The position numbers and the translations under genes are program-made. DNA of 45,956 nucleotides from Octopus sinensis (lineage: Eukaryota): NCBI RefSeq assembly GCF_006345805.1, contig NW_021834967.1, positions 1-45,956 on the forward strand, read 5' to 3'. Shown in pieces: positions 29,169 to 37,835 of the stretch. The first letter of the stretch is position 1, and every line of letters begins with the position of its first letter. The notes below the pieces were generated by a model that had not been told where the DNA came from, made no database searches, and worked only from the letters and a program-made list of their open reading frames with translations.

Positions 29169-29927
29169 TTATCCTCAACGGTGAGAAGATCAGCATAAAA
29201 CACATCATAAAATCTCCACACGCTACTCACAATCACAATAAATTTACTAAAACCTTCTCAACAGTACACGAGAAACATCCCTCCACCAATCCGAGGTTTC
29301 GCTTCACGTCAGACACCAACTGGCTGCAATTTAAGATCGCTCAGTCCTCCCCAAATAGAACATTCTGTTATTACACGTTTGAAATCTTCGTTCCAAATTT
29401 GGCTTCAAATTATGGCTTCCAAAAACATAGAAGAATCTGAGAATAGTCATTTTTACGTAGATTTGGTTCACTTCACATTTTTCACATTCATAGAGGAAAA
29501 AAAAAAAAAAAACAAGGTATCTTTTACTGAAAACATTCGGTAAATAAAACTGATTGAATGGGTATAAATATGGTTGTGTGGTTAAGAAAGCCTCATAATC
29601 GTTTCCGGTTTCAATTCCGTTATGTGGACGGCTATTTAGGCAATTATCGTTCACCCCCACGTAAGTATAGCAAATACGTTATGAATGAAATTTTGCCAAT
29701 AGAAAATGCTCGGAAGCTTGCCACATGTATGTATGTATGTATGTATGTATGTATGTATGTATATATGTATGTATGTATGTGTGTGTGTGTATGTATGCAT
29801 ACATGTATGTATGTATGTATGTATGTATGTATATATGTATGTATGTATGTATGTGTGTGTGTATGTATGTATGCATACATGTATGTATGTATGTATGTAT
29901 GTATGTGTGTATGTATGTATGTATGTA

Positions 29928-29958
<31 letters not shown>

Positions 29959-30171
29959 ATGTATGTATGTATTAGCCTAACTGTGTTTCATGTTACAAAT
30001 TAAAATCCGGAAAAACAAGTTTCAACAATCAAATGTTCATATGTTCACAGAAACTTTTTTGAGTCTCCACATGAACCGTCTTCTTGATGGTTTAGAGGCA
30101 ACAATTCTGAGTGAATCACCTCTAACAAACTGAAAATTGTCTGCATGTCTGTCTGTCTGTCTGTCTGTATG

Positions 30172-30204
<33 letters not shown>

Positions 30205-30275
30205 CTCTCTCTCTCTATATATAATATATATTATAATATATATATACAATTAAGGGCTCCTAAATAAACTACATG

Positions 30276-30311
<36 letters not shown>

Positions 30312-30530
30312 CAATTAAGGGCTCCTAAATAACTACATGAATAATATTTTTCTATATGATAATATTTTTGTCTTATGACTAATTCGTCTTTTGTGCTGGG
30401 CACCTGGTAGTAAATAATATTACTACCCTTCTTGTTTATATTCGCATACTACATGATGAATTTATTCGTAGACTAATTCGTCTTTTGTGCTGGGCACCTG
30501 GTAGTAAATAATATTACTACCCTTCTTGTT

Positions 30531-30572
<42 letters not shown>

Positions 30573-33195: not shown

Positions 33196-34583
33196 CTATT
33201 TAAAGCAAGCCATAAGTGTAACGCCGCAATGGGGGCATCGAAAAGCCGACTGTAAGAGCCCTTTTACCATCCGGCCTCTGGCAAACAAAATATGGAAGAG
33301 TTCGGAGACACAAAGGTTGCACTGTCTTCTGCCCTATCAAATGGGAGGGCCACCGACAAAATTGACCATTCCAGCCTATAGCTTAAGTTCGCATCCTTCA
33401 GTCGCCATTAGCTTACTGAGTCCCGTGGTCTGGCGCTTGTTCACGTCCCGAAAAGTTGCGTAATGGTTGGAGACACGCAAAGACAATCTTGAGGATGATG
33501 CCCCTACATAAGTGAAGGCATCTGAGTCCGTGTAAACCTTGCATTGGTAGACGGCGTTTTTGATCTTGGAGTTCGCCGACGTGAATCTTAATCTGCTAGG
33601 ATTAGTTTCTGAAATTAGAACTGCGTTCCTGTCATATATTCGTTCCGAGACCTGCAGCCGCTTACTACTCTATTTTCCACTACGTCACTATAACTATAGG
33701 AATAACCCCTGATTCTCCACTATCTATCAGAGTGCTGTCATTGCTACTGCCCGTGGTACCTGCTATTGCGGGAAATGATGCTGGGGATGCTATGGGGCTC
33801 TCTACTACCTACTCCATTATTACCGTCAACCACAACACCCCTATTTATACTATACCCCTAGTGGGTACTCCCTGGCTGGAGCTGAGATTATGTGTCACTG
33901 TACTGCTCTCTATCATTATTACTACTAATAATTATTCCTACTACTGAGCATTAAACCGGGAGCGGAAGAGGCTGTGCCTCCGGAAAAAGGTGATAGGGCT
34001 TAGTAAGTAGCCTATTATTATGGGAGGCGATTATCTGGGCGAGGTTTTTAGTGTTGGAGAAAGCTATCCTAACTTTATGTGAGTTAACCGTGGAGTAATA
34101 TTTGGAATTTCTGGGGAAGTTATTGGCGATGGCTTGTCTAAACATGAGGGGGAGGTTAGTTCTAATCTGCTTACCAAAGGGGATTACAAACCATATATGC
34201 TTATTCCTATCAGTGTGATGGGTGGGACGCCAGCTCTCGCATTCGGGTGGGTGATTCTCGGATGAATAACGGGTCTTGGGTTAGTGTAAGACCTCCCGGA
34301 CCGATAATTATCCTTGTTCGCTAAATTAAAATGCGGGAGCGACTACCCCCGTCTACGCCGCGCTCCCGTCCCTACTTAAATGTTAATGTTATTATTACGG
34401 CGGCCTATCCTGATGACCGAATGATGGCATCGGAAGGGCCGGATCAATATAAATTACCTTCTGCCTATAACGGCCTTGGATAGTGCGGCGTTATAAAATT
34501 CCGCTTTCTTCCTGCATAAAAATATCGGCACTGGCGGACAAGCCAGACAATCTTAGAGAGGTTTTTTTTAACCAAATTGTCTG
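33196..34583 (-). pseudogene. PLE C-terminal coding remnant: RT thumb, low-complexity linkers, GIY-YIG endonuclease
   Basis: RLSGLSASADIF..FYNAALSKA; KHIWFVIPFGKQIRTNL..NNFPRNSKYYSTVNSHKVRIAFSNTKNLAQIIASHN; KNAVYQCKV...TYVGASS..RVSNH..TTGLSK..WRLKD..WSIL..CNLC..FRCPH; stop at 33196-33198; many single-base frameshifts. Confidence 0.85.
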
Positions 34584-35269
34584 TTAAGATATCTACGATT
34601 AACCACTGCAAGGGGAATTACTCCTGTAAGACAAACGGGGCTTGGGTTTTCTCACAGCGGGGGTTTTTCCTTTGCAAGGCAGGCTTGATGAACACACACA
34701 CACATAAACATAATATATATATATTTTTTTTATTTTTTCTTTCTGCCACCCAACGGTTATCACGGCAGTAGCCACTGACAGCCGAACGATCAAACGCACA
34801 CACGTACACAAAAAATTTTTCTTCTACCCCTACGCCAACACACACATATATAGAACATATACCACACACACGTCTCTAAGTAGATTTTTTCTCGCCCCTT
34901 ATAAAACATCCAATATTCCTTAAATAGTCAGAACTTTTTTCTCGGTCACAAAGAACATCTATACACCCTCACCCACATGATTGACCGATGCCTGACCCGT
35001 TGAATTCTTCAGCCACGGTTCTCAACATACACTGATAAACCGTTTCGCCATGGGCTCTTAGGAGCACAGTTCGATTTGTTTTTTGCTCCGCCTCTTCTTT
35101 GTTTTGTTTTTCCAACGGATTTCTTTTTTCTTTCTGAAGAGAAAGACACAATATTGTCCCATTATTCAATCGGATTTTGGTAATTTGTGCCTTCGAACAC
35201 GTGTAGAATGAAATAAACGATTTCTGTTCAATCTGCGTTCAGCTCCATTTCTTCATTCACCAATAATGT

Positions 35270-35301
<32 letters not shown>

Positions 35302-35361
35302 TTATATATACATATATGTGTATATATATATATGTATCTATATATATATATATATATATAT

Positions 35362-35398
<37 letters not shown>

Positions 35399-37415
35399 TG
35401 TGTTGTTGTGTGTTTGTGTGTGTGTGGGTGTGTTTTGTGTGTGTGTGTGGTTTTCATGAATGTTATAATGTGTGTATCACATTAGATAATTTGACTGAAT
35501 GATTGAAGATTGATTACTAGAAAATGAAAAGAGGGAAAAGAGATTTGGATAATATATTATTGTGGCCTCCCTCCGATTTTAATTATTAATGATTGATTTT
35601 GAAGGCTGAGTACTTTCAAGTGTTATGTTTTACACAAAGAAAGTGATATATTGAGTATGTCGGACGTTCGGCCGGTCTCGGGTGATTCCGGTGTATTAAA
35701 AACTACAGGATGGCGGCGTGTATGAAAAAAGCTTTTAGCGCTCTCAGTTCTTGTCATTTTATTGCCTTTTTATGACAGCGACGTCGGGAACGTATATTCT
35801 GGATGACAAGGCGGGCGAGCTGGCAGAAACGTTAGCGCGCGGGCGAAATGCTCAGCAGTATTTCGTCTGTCGCTACGTTCTGAGTTCAATTCCGCCGAGG
35901 TCGACTTTGCCTTTCATCCTTTCGGGGTCGATTAAATAGTACCAGTTCGCACTGGGTCGAGATAATCGACTTAATCCGTTTGTCTGTCCTTGTTTGTCCT
36001 TTCTGTGTTTAGTAGCCCCTTGTGTAGTAAAGAAATACGTATTTTCTGGATGAGCTAGTTGCTCCCGGTATACCCACAAAAAGTGGTTAATCTATCGTAA
36101 GCATCGGTTTCAAACTTTAGCACAAGGCCAGCAGTTTCGGGTGACGGGGGGGGGGGGCTAAGTCAATTAAACATCGATCCCAGTGCTCATTGGTACTTAT
36201 CTTATCGACCGCGAAAGACTGAAAGACATGTTGACCTCGGCGAATTTAAACTCAGATGTAAAGACAGATGAAATATTACTAAGCATTTTACTCAAGGCGG
36301 TGGAAACGGCTACACCAGCTCAGCGCCTTAAATCTATCACAAGTATGGGTTTCAAATTTTGACACAAGGCCTGTAATTTCGGGGGAGGGGGCAACTCAAT
36401 TACATCGACTCCAGTGTTTCAACTGCTACTTATTTTATTAATCTCGATAAAATGTAAGGTAAAGTCGGCCCAGTGGATGTTAACATAAAGCTAAAGACTA
36501 GCGAAAAAATTATATATATATTTTTATATATGCAAATTTAAAGCATAATTTTGTCATTTGTTTAAGAAGCACAAATGGAAACATGTTTAGGAAGTAAGAA
36601 TTATCAATTTATTAATAAATAATTATTAACTTTCAGCACTCCATTTTCTTTTTGTTTTACTAATTGAATTCTTTTACAAGGCTTAGAAAAGCTTAAGGAT
36701 TGCTCACTGCAATGAGTGTTGTGAATCTGGGAGGGCAATTTTTTAATAATATCATAATTAACTGATTCTCCTGTGTTCACTTTTACCCAAACTAAGAACT
36801 TTTCAGCACCACTTATATATATATTAATATTTCTAAATCTCTCTAAAAGAACTACGGCAGCGGTACTGGATATTATCGCCAAGCTAAAATCGCCAAGCTA
36901 AAATCCACATGGATGTTGAACCAGCAAGGGGAAGCTGCTGGCCTCCCTGCCCCTGTTCGAAGGTTATAATGGACACCAGGTTTGTGTGTCACATAACAAG
37001 CTAGAAGCATGCCTCTTGGAGCTAATCAACGGCAGCATTCGTCTATATTCCTGGACTGCCATGTTTGCCTGGCGATAACTATTAATAAATAATATATATT
37101 ATATATATATATATATATTAAATATATATATATATATAATATATATATAAACAAGAGGGTAGTAATATTATTTACTACCAGGTGCCCAGCACAAAAGACG
37201 AATTAGTCTACGAATAAATTCATCATGTAGTATGCGAATATAAACAAGAAGGGTAGTAATATTATTTACTACCAGGTGCCCAGCACAAAAGACGAATTAG
37301 TCATAAGACAACAATATATTCATATAGAAAATATTATTCATGTAGTTATTTAGGAGCCCTTAATTGTATATATATATATATATATATTATTCATGTAGTT
37401 TATTTAGGAGCCCTA

Positions 37416-37480
<65 letters not shown>

Positions 37481-37835
37481 ATTATATAATATATATTATT
37501 CTATATATATATATAGATAGAGAGAGAGAGAGAGGAGAGAGAACAGACAGACATACAGACAGACAACATGCAGACATTTTCAGTTTGTTAGAGGTGATTC
37601 ACTCAGAATTGTTGCCTCTAAACCATCAGAAGACGGTTCATGTGGAGACTCAAAAAGTTTCTGTGAACATATGAACATTTGATTGTTGAAACTTGTTTTT
37701 CCGGATTTTATTTGTAACATGAAACACAGTTAGGCTAATACATACATACATACATACATACTACATACACACACCACACATACATACATACATACATACA
37801 CACATACATACATACATACATACATACATACATGT
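34584..37835. repeat. Right arm of large inverted repeat (partner 29724-33140)
   Basis: Begins ttaagatatctacgattaacc and ends in (CATA)n; differs from the left arm mostly by 1-bp indels, microsatellite lengths and one gap of about 155 bp. Confidence 0.95.
35131..35208 (+). ncRNA. Type I hammerhead ribozyme motif (right-arm copy)
   Basis: ttt CTGAAGA gaaagacaca ...35 nt... tgtgccttc GAA-CACGTGT A gaa; one A of GAAA is missing here but present in the left arm. Confidence 0.7.

What the first reader, a model, noticed from the sequence alone, without database searches (positions are those of the whole stretch)
29724..37835. 8.1-kb palindrome built around a Penelope-like element and carrying about 2.7 kb of host-like cargo
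Seen: arms of about 3.4 and 3.25 kb enclose a unique 1443-bp spacer that is a 5'-truncated PLE ORF. The inversion starts about 55 bp past the stop codon, exactly at the 5' truncation, and both arms end in a TATG microsatellite. Only about 0.7-0.85 kb of each arm looks like PLE 3' region; the rest is SINEs, a mariner relic and unique DNA. Established: PLEs often form inverted pseudo-LTR structures and favour microsatellites. Inference: a read-through PLE transcript was copied into a hairpin, mobilising or duplicating kilobases of flank. This would make PLEs a source of large palindromes, dsRNA and gene-fragment shuffling. Caveat: abundant 1-bp indels suggest low-quality consensus, so an assembly artefact is possible, although simple fold-back reads would not leave a unique spacer.
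Basis: partly seen in the sequence, partly recalled or inferred. Interest (0 to 1): 0.8.

Follow-up and report, generated by a model that had tools for sequence, protein, structure and literature searches.

The report
Retrotransposon insert flanked by duplicated, inverted DNA
The 8.1-kb palindrome is in the sequence, but only its inner 3 kb was made by a Penelope-like retrotransposon; the outer 2.4-kb arms are ordinary neighbouring DNA copied in reverse later, by DNA repair or by an assembly error, not cargo carried by the element.

Summary
The arms are 29724-33141 and 34583-37835, the unique spacer is 1441 bp, and the stop codon lies 54 nt from the inner junction. The centre (32299-35273) is a Penelope-like element (PLE) closest to the Hydra clade, inserted into a (TA)n tract in the standard head-to-head form: a 5'-truncated copy plus an inverted partial copy.

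The inference that a read-through PLE transcript carried 2.7 kb of cargo is not supported, for four reasons:
- The inverted PLE copy stops about 150 bp short of the element's 3' end and runs straight into (TA)55. An independent Octopus sinensis copy stops at the same point, so the PLE unit ends there.
- The right outer arm sits between two (TA)n tracts.
- Isolated substitutions are about 4 times denser in the PLE arms (1.45%) than in the outer arms (0.35%).
- Outer-arm differences are mostly 1-bp deletions in the right copy (23 against 4). All nine differences inside a shared SINE are derived in the right copy, which looks like sequencing error.

Best reading (0.45): a later fold-back repair event at the self-complementary (TA)n tract, helped by the PLE's own inverted repeat, copied the left flank in reverse. 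The main rival (0.30) is a false duplication in a noisy long-read assembly. Reads are needed to decide. Interest is low.

The parts
29725..29972 (+). (ATGT/TATG)n array at the left outer end, made of three blocks of about 76 bp. Only the last block (29877-29972) has a mirror copy in the right arm.
   Evidence: TRF; alignment; sequence print
29877..32298 (+). Left outer arm. This is the original flank: unique DNA plus SINE-related pieces (31192-31553, 31610-31856), ending in (AC)31(AT)8 at 32220-32298. No coding domain was detected.
   Evidence: In the SINE segment it carries the family-consensus state at all 9 sites where the arms differ
32299..32448 (-). Terminal ~150 bp of the PLE 3' end (the 'tail'). 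It is present only in the direct copy and absent from the right arm.
   Evidence: Homologous to L001 12310-12461, ending '...CATTTCA(C)ATA' followed by (TA)n in both loci
32449..33141 (-). PLE 3' untranslated region of the main copy, which forms the left inner arm. It contains a hammerhead-like motif at 32519-32591.
33142..34582 (-). Unique spacer: the rest of the 5'-truncated PLE. It holds the RT thumb, a linker, a low-complexity stretch of about 190 aa and a GIY-YIG endonuclease. The stop codon is at 33198-33196. At least 4 frame changes are visible.
   Evidence: Six-frame translation; tblastn with P0001 and the L001 EN region; alignment with relatives
34583..35273 (+). Inverted, 5'-truncated partial PLE copy, which forms the right inner arm, head-to-head with the main copy. 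It ends at the family-typical internal position and carries the hammerhead-like motif at 35134-35205.
35274..35392 (.). (TA)~55 tract: the (TA)n target of the PLE unit on its right side and the proposed priming site of the later fold-back event.
   Evidence: TRF row 35270-35399; sequence; (TA)n targeting of Hydra-clade PLEs (PMC8557442)
35393..37836 (-). Right outer arm: a reverse-complement copy of 29877-32298, running from (TG)n at 35399-35449 to (ATAC)n at 37738-37833. It carries nearly all of the 1-bp deletions and all of the derived SINE states.
37845..37966 (.). Second TA-rich tract, closing the right outer arm on its far side.
   Evidence: TRF; sequence

Best explanation
The structure is a composite of two unrelated events that share one cause, a (TA)n microsatellite.

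Event 1 (shown). A Hydra-clade-like Penelope-like element integrated into a (TA)n tract as the usual PLE unit (32299-35273). The unit is a 5'-truncated copy on the minus strand plus an adjacent inverted, more severely 5'-truncated copy, with their 5' ends meeting at 34582/34583. This arrangement follows from PLE enzymes nicking and extending both target strands. The two copies begin at two different internal RT start sites about 150 bp apart, so only one end has the 150-bp 'tail'.

Event 2 (inferred). Later, a break in the self-complementary, hairpin-prone (TA)n tract to the right of the unit was repaired by fold-back synthesis. The resected 3' strand folded back, stabilised by pairing of the two 0.7-kb PLE repeats with the 1.44-kb spacer as the loop. 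The (TA)n 3' end annealed to the short (AT)8 beside (AC)n, which skipped the 150-bp tail. Synthesis then copied the left flank outward for about 2.4 kb. Finally the nascent strand left the template in the (TATG)n array and re-annealed to the TA-rich other side of the break.

The result is a reverse-complement copy of ordinary flanking DNA lodged between two (TA)n tracts. It enlarges the PLE's own 0.7-kb inverted repeat into a 3.3-kb palindrome. The outer arms are in truth nearly identical; most of their apparent differences are consensus errors in the right copy.
For: PLE identity:
- The stitched spacer translation matches O. sinensis P0001 at 76% identity.
- P0001 has 2082 relatives. Long ones of 700-800 aa carry RW(R/K), DKT, YRDD, FLDV, WFNPPF, CxCX5C, GIY..YIG, CxLC..E and CxH, as described for the Hydra clade (PMC8557442).

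Unit boundaries:
- The 3' terminus followed by (TA)n is conserved in L001.
- The inverted copy stops at the same internal site, followed by (TA)n, in both loci.
- PLE enzymes extend both strands and initiate internally at two sites that define the 'tail' (PMC11167929).
- Adjacent inverted 5'-truncated copies are standard for PLEs (PMC8557442).

Separate history of the outer arms:
- Isolated substitutions are 7 in 1982 columns (outer) against 9 in 620 (inner), p=0.005, while 1-bp indel rates are similar.
- The 150-bp tail is in one arm only.
- The right outer arm is bracketed by (TA)n tracts.
- The right copy is a subset of the left at both ends.

Near-identity and error signature:
- 23 of 27 isolated 1-bp indels are deletions in the right arm, p=0.0003, and most are not in long homopolymers.
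- 9 of 9 difference events in the shared SINE are derived in the right arm.

Precedent:
- Fold-back inverted duplications leave a single-copy spacer (median 3.4 kb) and can be nucleated by inverted LINE/SINE copies (PMC3907307).
- A second near-identical duplication bounded by (TA)n lies in the same window at 12782-14067.
Against: - No reads were available, so the right outer arm may not exist in the genome.
- The strong one-sidedness of the differences fits a poorly supported copy at least as well as a real one.
- An interstitial fold-back event needs a second template switch back to the broken end. That step is inferred only from the TA/TATG composition of the junction.
- The substitution contrast rests on small counts (7 against 9) in an error-rich consensus.
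- Polarity in the PLE arms could be checked only over about 270 bp with a 70%-identical outgroup (2 derived in the main copy, 6 in the inverted copy).
- No orthologous or empty site could be retrieved.
Confidence: 0.45

Rival explanations
1. Assembly artefact. The PLE unit and the left flank are real, but the right outer arm (about 35393-37836) is a false, inverted duplicate of the left flank. It would have been introduced in a noisy long-read assembly at TA-rich microsatellites, which overlap equally well in either orientation. The source could be error-laden reads or the other haplotype.
For: - Differences between the outer arms look like errors: 1-bp deletions outnumber isolated substitutions 27 to 7, 23 of the 27 fall in the right copy, and most are not in long homopolymers.
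- All 9 SINE differences are derived in the right copy. Two real copies diverging independently should share them about equally.
- The window shows at least 4 visible frame changes in the 1.4-kb PLE ORF remnant.
- Both junctions of the right arm lie in TA-rich microsatellites.
- False 'homotype' and 'heterotype' duplications are documented in assemblies and are marked by low or half depth (PMC9516828).
- PLE tandem and inverted structures are known to disturb assemblies (PMC8557442).
Against: - Two false joins are needed, and the left-hand (AT)8 gives only about 16 bp of TA overlap.
- There are no Ns or gaps anywhere in the window, whereas reported false duplications often flank gaps.
- A simple fold-back chimeric read is excluded. 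The right arm lacks the 150-bp PLE tail, has (TA)55 instead, and its PLE part differs from the left one by real-looking substitutions on both lineages.
- The right arm is followed by 8 kb of unrelated sequence and not by the mirror of the left flank.
- Seven isolated substitutions in the outer arms are more than indel-dominated consensus error alone would predict.
Confidence: 0.3
2. Pre-existing palindrome. An inverted duplication of 2 x 2.4 kb centred on (AC)n(TA)n(GT)n already existed, and the (TA)n-seeking PLE later integrated into its centre.
For: - Removing 32299-35273 leaves (AC)n(TA)n(TG)n flanked by mirror-image arms.
- Hydra-clade PLEs insert into (TA)n (PMC8557442).
- The PLE unit lies inside the TA tract, with (AT)8 on its left and (TA)55 on its right.
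Against: - The outer arms would then be older than the PLE arms, yet they are about 4 times less diverged. To rescue the idea, the two PLE copies must have been reverse-transcribed from different source RNAs, or arm-to-arm gene conversion must have spared the PLE part.
- A spacer-less 2.4-kb perfect palindrome is expected to be unstable.
- The right copy is a truncated subset of the left at the outer end (one block of about 96 bp against three TATG blocks). This suggests copying from left to right and not a symmetric origin.
Confidence: 0.12
3. A PLE transcript read through 2.6 kb of downstream flank and was reverse-transcribed into a hairpin or head-to-head pair, inserting PLE plus cargo as one 8.1-kb palindrome at a TATG microsatellite.
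For: - PLEs do form head-to-head inverted copies.
- Both arms end in the same microsatellite, in the orientation expected if it were the 3' end of two cDNAs.
Against: - The right arm's PLE part stops at the family's internal start site and abuts (TA)55. A read-through cDNA would contain the 150-bp tail in both arms.
- The inner and outer arms differ in substitution density.
- There is no target-site duplication at 29724/37836.
- In the documented host-gene captures, the cargo lies between pLTRs with a TSD, not distal to the 3' ends.
- The independent L001 copy shows no flank palindrome.
- No coding cargo was found.
Confidence: 0.05

Closest known systems
Hydra clade of C-terminal-endonuclease Penelope-like elements (Craig, Yushenova, Rodriguez & Arkhipova 2021, PMC8557442)
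   Same: - A single ORF with an RT followed by a GIY-YIG endonuclease that lacks the CCHH motif.
- CxxC and CxH motifs around the conserved E and N region.
- DKT in place of DKG, and an RW(K/R)-type N-terminal motif, both seen in the fuller O. sinensis copy L001.
- Insertion into (TA)n.
- Reported from molluscs among other aquatic invertebrates.
- Nearest relatives by HMMER carry every hallmark.
   Different: - Both octopus copies lack the CxCX5C linker motif in all frames and have a low-complexity, N/S-rich stretch of about 190 aa there.
- NPPF is replaced by VIPF.
- The fuller copy is about 3.6 kb, not under 3 kb.
- No canonical hammerhead was found by Rfam, only a hammerhead-like core.
- The window copy is 5'-truncated and frameshifted, so it is dead.
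Standard PLE insertion architecture: pseudo-LTRs, an adjacent inverted 5'-truncated copy, and a 'tail' at one end (PMC8557442; PMC3846280; PMC11167929)
   Same: - Head-to-head copies with random 5' truncation.
- A short palindrome (TTAA) at the inverted junction.
- An extension present at only one end of the unit, consistent with two internal RT start sites.
- Both target strands used as primers.
   Different: The one-sided extension here is about 150 bp, not 30-40 bp. There is no direct pLTR in this copy.
Fold-back inverted duplications with a single-copy spacer (Hermetz et al. 2014, PMC3907307; yeast foldback inversions, PMC7467729)
   Same: - Inverted duplication separated by a kilobase-scale unique spacer.
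- The fold-back can be nucleated by pre-existing inverted TE copies at the spacer edges.
- The newly made arm is identical to its template at birth.
   Different: The described cases are terminal, megabase-scale, and pass through dicentric chromosomes. This one is a 2.4-kb interstitial copy that must have re-joined the other break end, so it resembles a templated insertion by synthesis-dependent strand annealing.
PLE-mediated mobilisation of host genes in Adineta vaga (Arkhipova et al. 2013, PMC3846280), and L1 3' transduction and twin priming (own knowledge)
   Different: In A. vaga the cargo lies between pLTRs and the insert has a TSD. Here the 'cargo' lies outside the element's ends, the PLE sequence is not continuous with it in the right arm, and no TSD is present.
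False duplications in genome assemblies (Ko et al. 2022, PMC9516828)
   Same: Near-identical copies on the same scaffold, with one copy carrying error-type differences.
   Different: No gap lies between the copies. The orientation is inverted, and two microsatellite junctions are required. Depth and k-mer criteria could not be tested.

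Membership tests
Penelope-like elements (PLE) | PLE-type reverse transcriptase (RT core with YxDD, thumb with FLDV...SNHP) | tested here: met
   The window copy keeps only the thumb, from about 34587 downward, aligned to P0001 and L001. 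The fuller relative L001 and six 700-800-aa relatives show DKT, FDxxxFYPS, (P/T)MG..D.A, YRDD and FLDV. Pfam RVT_1 gives only a sub-threshold hit in one relative and none for L001.
Penelope-like elements (PLE) | GIY-YIG endonuclease fused to the RT | tested here: met
   'VYQCKV...YVGASS..R...H' aligns with the GIY..YIG..R..H columns of the relatives. Pfam GIY-YIG is sub-threshold in relative P0153 (E=9e-4) and is not detected in the window sequence itself.
Penelope-like elements (PLE) | Adjacent inverted 5'-truncated copy (inverted pseudo-LTR arrangement) | tested here: met
   34583-35273 mirrors 33141-32449. A 42-bp counterpart lies in L001 at 8757-8798.
Penelope-like elements (PLE) | 'Tail': an extension present at one end of the unit only | tested here: met
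   The 150 bp at 32299-32448 are in the direct copy only. The inverted copy has the same endpoint in two independent loci.
Penelope-like elements (PLE) | Hammerhead ribozyme in the terminal repeat | tested here: inconclusive
   No Rfam hammerhead hit at E<=10. A CUGAAGA - stem - GAAA - palindromic helix III core is conserved in three copies, with 3 compensatory pairs and 85% of cells paired against 24-52% for slid controls. Only three sequences were available.
Hydra clade of PLEs | DKG motif changed to DKT; RWK-type N-terminal motif | tested here: met
   Seen in the O. sinensis relative L001 ('SDKTRNTY', 'RIRWLVFF') and in all six long relatives. The window copy is truncated upstream of these motifs, so this rests on homology.
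Hydra clade of PLEs | [quoted passage not shown] | tested here: met
   The window has a single Cys between GIY and YIG, then 'CNLCVSE...' and 'CPH'. By contrast, the window's second PLE (26960-27331) has the canonical C..C...H...H pattern.
Hydra clade of PLEs | Linker with a CxCX5C motif | tested here: not met
   No C.C.{4,7}C pattern in any frame between the linker and the endonuclease, in the window or in L001. It is present in relatives P0141, P0153, P0177, P0229, P0123 and P0131. I therefore call the element Hydra-like (nearest relatives) and not a typical member.
Hydra clade of PLEs | Insertion into (TA)n | tested here: met
   (AT)8 lies at 32282-32298 and (TA)55 at 35274-35392 around the unit. 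(TA)n lies on both sides of the L001 copy.
Retroelement-mediated transduction or capture of flanking DNA | Cargo continuous with element sequence in every copy made, and a target-site duplication around the whole insert | tested here: not met
   The right arm's PLE part ends 150 bp short of the 3' terminus and is separated from the 'cargo' by (TA)55. There is no TSD at 29724/37836.
Retroelement-mediated transduction or capture of flanking DNA | A donor locus with the same flank elsewhere in the genome | not testable with these tools
   No cephalopod genome DNA search was available. Protein-anchored look-ups found no orthologous or paralogous locus.
Fold-back inverted duplication | Inverted copies separated by a single-copy spacer, with inverted homology at the spacer edges | tested here: met
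   A 1441-bp spacer bounded by 0.7-kb inverted PLE copies. Compare the spacers of 766 bp to 70 kb and the inverted Alu/L1 edges in PMC3907307.
Fold-back inverted duplication | The duplicated arm is real: spanning molecules and two-copy depth | not testable with these tools
   No reads or second assembly were available.

The most novel reading that the evidence does not exclude
A Penelope-like element's reverse transcriptase, and not DNA repair, produced the whole palindrome: template jumps or read-through during target-primed reverse transcription on both strands of a (TA)n site copied kilobases of neighbouring DNA into mirror-image arms. PLEs would then be a direct source of large palindromes and of flank duplication. 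The 150-bp asymmetry and the (TA)55 tract would have to be later microsatellite-driven changes, and the excess divergence of the PLE arms an artefact of polishing with reads from paralogous copies.
Probability: 0.05. Interest if true: 0.65.

Novelty: new member of a known kind. Interest (0 to 1): 0.22.

Why it matters
As found, it matters little for biology. It is a dead copy of a known retrotransposon class in its usual arrangement, next to a small inverted duplication that may not be real.

Three modest points are worth keeping:
- It documents a Hydra-like PLE lineage in octopods, with a reproducible ~150-bp one-sided 'tail'. That fits the two-start-site model of PLE reverse transcription.
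- If the outer arm is real, it shows how a (TA)n-seeking element that arrives with its own inverted repeat can seed growth of a larger palindrome by fold-back repair. A genome-wide survey could test this.
- It is a caution for annotation. Near-identical inverted copies in noisy long-read assemblies, and gene models such as 'myb-like protein I' (a PLE fragment), should not be read as gene shuffling without read support.

Tried and rejected
- **Pfam on the spacer, L001 and the second PLE**: no usable hits. The family is too divergent, so identity was established through P0001's relatives instead.
- **Rfam hammerhead search**, three scans: only microsatellite look-alikes of miRNA families. These are chance matches.
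- **Retrieving the same or an orthologous locus**: exact look-ups of three window ORFs and a chimeric PLE#2 + Tc1/mariner query reached at best 66% identity, so no orthologue was found. The LINE ORF search only placed the window among cephalopods (Argonauta hians, Acanthosepion pharaonis).
- **'Mariner relic' and coding cargo in the arms**: not found.
- **Simple fold-back or missed-adapter chimeric read**: rejected. The spacer is unique, the right arm lacks the 150-bp tail, and its PLE part differs by substitutions.
- **Template switch within the 0.7-kb PLE repeats themselves**: rejected. Copying out of the left repeat would have carried the 150-bp tail into the right arm.
- **Error-prone repair synthesis as the source of the right-arm deletions**: rejected. 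About 1.2% is orders of magnitude above any known polymerase error rate, so these are sequencing or consensus errors.
- **Uniform window-wide error rate**: does not hold. The LINE at 18459-21883 keeps ORFs of up to 493 aa, so consensus quality varies by region.

Full report
**1. The observation.**
Self-comparison of 28-40 kb shows two collinear inverted blocks.
- Outer block: 29760/29877-32295 against 37934/37836-35385, with 2621 columns, 91.8% identity, 60 mismatches and 156 gap bases.
- Inner block: 32449-33141 against 35273-34583, about 93% identical.

A global alignment of the arms and the printed junctions place the inner junctions on a palindromic TTAA at 33141/33142 and 34582/34583. The spacer is therefore 1441 bp. 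Counting the left microsatellite, the arms are 3418 and 3253 bp.

Both outer ends lie in a TATG-type array, (ATGT)n at 29725-29972 and (ATAC)n at 37738-37833. The two arrays are reverse complements of each other, so they belong to the arms and are not a direct-repeat target. The window contains no Ns.

**2. What the centre is.**
The spacer has no long ORF. Its minus strand nevertheless reads, across several frames, as the C-terminal part of a protein. A stitched translation found one close relative, P0001, an Octopus sinensis model named 'myb-like protein I' (76% identity).

The locus of P0001, L001 (CM016882.1), holds a fuller copy of the same element at 8843-12461. That copy aligns to window 34586-33275 and 32604-32281 at about 70% DNA identity.

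An exhaustive HMMER search with P0001 gave 2082 relatives. Long ones of 700-800 aa are single-ORF proteins that carry the following motifs in order:
- an RW(R/K) motif, DKT, FDxxxFYPS, YRDD and FLDV;
- a WFNPPF linker and CxCX5C;
- GIY..YIG, CxLC..E and CxH.

This is the description of the Hydra clade of Penelope-like elements: DKT in place of DKG, no CCHH, a CxCX5C linker, CxxC and CxH around the conserved E and N, and insertion into (TA)n (PMC8557442).

The window copy retains the RT thumb, the linker and the endonuclease. Its stop codon is at 33198-33196, 54 nt from the inner junction. It differs from typical Hydra members in lacking the CxCX5C motif in every frame, as L001 also does. A low-complexity stretch of about 190 aa sits there instead. 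I therefore call it Hydra-like.

Pfam models do not recognise this family at threshold, and Rfam finds no hammerhead. A hammerhead-like core (CUGAAGA, helix II, GAAA, palindromic helix III) is conserved in the three available copies, with three compensatory pairs. This is suggestive only.

The window is cephalopod. The nearest named LINE relatives are from Argonauta hians and Acanthosepion pharaonis, and its SINE copies are 87-91% identical to O. sinensis ones.

**3. Where the element ends.**
In the element's sense orientation, the main copy and L001 stay alignable up to '...CATTTCA(C)ATA', and both then run into (TA)n. The 3' terminus of the main copy is therefore at about 32299, next to (AT)8(GT/AC)n.

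The inverted copy (34583-35273) stops about 150 bp earlier, after '...CACCAATAATGTT', and continues directly as (TA)~55.

L001 has the same feature. A 42-bp inverted fragment lies upstream of its copy (8757-8798). It ends at the homologous internal position and then runs into (TA)n.

So in two independent insertions the inverted copy starts at an internal site, and the terminal 150 bp is present at one end only. This is the PLE 'tail' phenomenon. It has been explained by reverse transcription that initiates at two internal sites and by extension of both target strands (PMC11167929).

The PLE insertion unit is thus 32299-35273, inserted into (TA)n in the standard head-to-head arrangement (PMC8557442).

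**4. What the outer arms are.**
They contain SINE-related segments (31192-31553 and 31610-31856) and otherwise unique DNA. No Pfam domain appears in any frame, and there is no match to the window's Tc1/mariner copy. L001 shares nothing with them except SINEs, and its own flanks are not mirror images.

In the right arm the outer segment is not continuous with PLE sequence. It lies between (TA)55 (35274-35392) and a second TA-rich tract (37845-37966). It is also a subset of the left flank at both ends: it holds one of the three TATG blocks, and it has the (AC)n(AT)n edge without the PLE tail.

**5. Two kinds of difference between the arms.**
I counted only changes flanked by three matching columns on each side and outside microsatellites.

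| Measure | Outer arms | PLE (inner) arms | Test |
|---|---|---|---|
| Columns counted | 1982 | 620 | |
| Isolated substitutions | 7 (0.35%) | 9 (1.45%) | Fisher p=0.005 |
| Isolated 1-bp indels | 27 (1.4%) | 12 (1.9%) | p=0.34 |
| Indel base missing from right copy : from left copy | 23 : 4 (binomial p=0.0003) | 5 : 7 | |

Most of the outer-arm indels are not in long homopolymers.

Within the SINE shared by both arms, five other copies serve as an outgroup. All nine difference events are derived in the right arm (p=0.004).

Real copies diverging independently should share changes about equally and should show far more substitutions than indels. The outer-arm differences are therefore mostly consensus errors in the right copy, and the true arms are nearly identical.

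In the PLE arms, derived states occur on both sides (2 in the main copy, 6 in the inverted copy). This rests on only about 270 bp with a distant outgroup. The inner and outer arms have different histories.

**6. Explanations.**

None of these is seen. I put it at 0.05.

*A pre-existing palindrome with a later PLE insertion* fits the mirror-image (AC)n(TA)n(TG)n that remains after the unit is removed. It predicts older outer arms, however, which is the opposite of what is seen. I put it at 0.12.

*My preferred reading (0.45)* is a later DNA-level event:
- A break occurred in the hairpin-prone, self-complementary (TA)n tract to the right of the unit.
- The resected strand folded back, stabilised by the PLE's own 0.7-kb inverted repeats, with the spacer as the loop.
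- The (TA)n 3' end primed on the short (AT)8 next to (AC)n, which skipped the 150-bp tail.
- Synthesis ran outward over the left flank.
- The new strand was released in the TATG array and annealed to the TA-rich far side of the break.

Fold-back inverted duplications typically leave a single-copy spacer of a few kilobases, and they can be nucleated by inverted LINE or SINE copies (PMC3907307). So a unique spacer does not argue against fold-back repair. A second near-identical duplication bounded by (TA)n lies in the same window at 12782-14067, with no substitutions and two 1-bp deletions in its 375-bp unique part.

*The main rival (0.30)* is that the right outer arm is a false duplicate.
- For: the one-sided, deletion-rich differences, the TA-rich junctions, and the known trouble that PLE structures and haplotypes cause assemblers (PMC8557442; PMC9516828).
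- Against: it needs two false joins with very little overlap on the left side, there is no gap, and any simple fold-back read is excluded by the missing tail and the diverged PLE arm.

**7. Comparison and verdict.**
The centre is a new but ordinary and dead member of a known retrotransposon class, in its textbook arrangement. The outer palindrome is either a small, very young fold-back duplication of ordinary flank or an assembly error. Nothing indicates gene-fragment cargo.

PLE-mediated capture of host DNA is documented (PMC3846280). In those cases the cargo lies between the terminal repeats and has a target-site duplication, which is not the case here.

Long reads spanning 35200-35500 and 37700-38000, together with depth or k-mer multiplicity over the outer arm, would settle whether the arm is real. 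A family-wide census of flanks would show whether (TA)n-seeking PLEs recurrently seed palindromes. Interest is 0.22.

Noticed in passing
window 26950-28000 (-): A second, unrelated PLE fragment of the canonical type: YVDD, FLDV, and a GIY-YIG with the C..C...H...H pattern (ORF 26960-27331). It is 5'-truncated and has frameshifts and stops. Its relatives, up to 66% identical, carry PF00078 and PF26215.
   Followed up: partly
window 12782-14067: A near-identical tandem duplication (period about 570 bp) whose copies are bounded by (TA)n tracts. The 375-bp unique part shows no substitutions and two 1-bp deletions, both in the second copy. This is the same (TA)n-bounded, error-like pattern as the palindrome's outer arms.
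   Followed up: partly
L001 8757-8798 and 12269-12310 (O. sinensis CM016882.1): An independent insertion of the same PLE family carries a 42-bp inverted fragment that ends at the same internal site as the window's inverted copy, about 150 bp short of the 3' terminus, and then runs into (TA)n. A second, 78%-identical copy follows in tandem at 12502-13442.
   Followed up: yes
window 32519-32591 (-), 35134-35205 (+); L001 about 12171-12245: A hammerhead-like core (CUGAAGA, helix II, GAAA, palindromic helix III CACGUG/CAUAUG) with three compensatory pairs among three copies. No Rfam model detects it. The main copy has a G-to-U change in the core.
   Followed up: partly
L001 10001-11056 (protein P0001): The O. 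sinensis gene model named 'myb-like protein I' is a PLE fragment (RT thumb and linker) that reads on into an N-rich low-complexity stretch. The name is an annotation artefact. N-rich inserts between RT and EN were also described for Adineta vaga PLEs (PMC3846280).
   Followed up: partly
window 18459-21883 (+): A LINE with apurinic-endonuclease-like and RT ORFs (175, 493, 359 and 173 aa), about 50-56% GC, with only a few frame breaks. Its nearest named relatives are in Argonauta hians and Acanthosepion pharaonis, which places the window in cephalopods.
   Followed up: partly
window about 42400-43700 (+): A Tc1/mariner-type transposase remnant (136-aa ORF at 42553-42963, with continuation in other frames). 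It has no counterpart inside the palindrome.
   Followed up: partly
window 8527-9093; 28661-29177; many others: Three tandem SINE-like units of about 184 bp at 8527-9093, an (ATC)172 array at 28661-29177, and very dense TCTA, TATG, TA and AC microsatellites throughout. Microsatellites bound almost every structural feature in the window.
   Followed up: no
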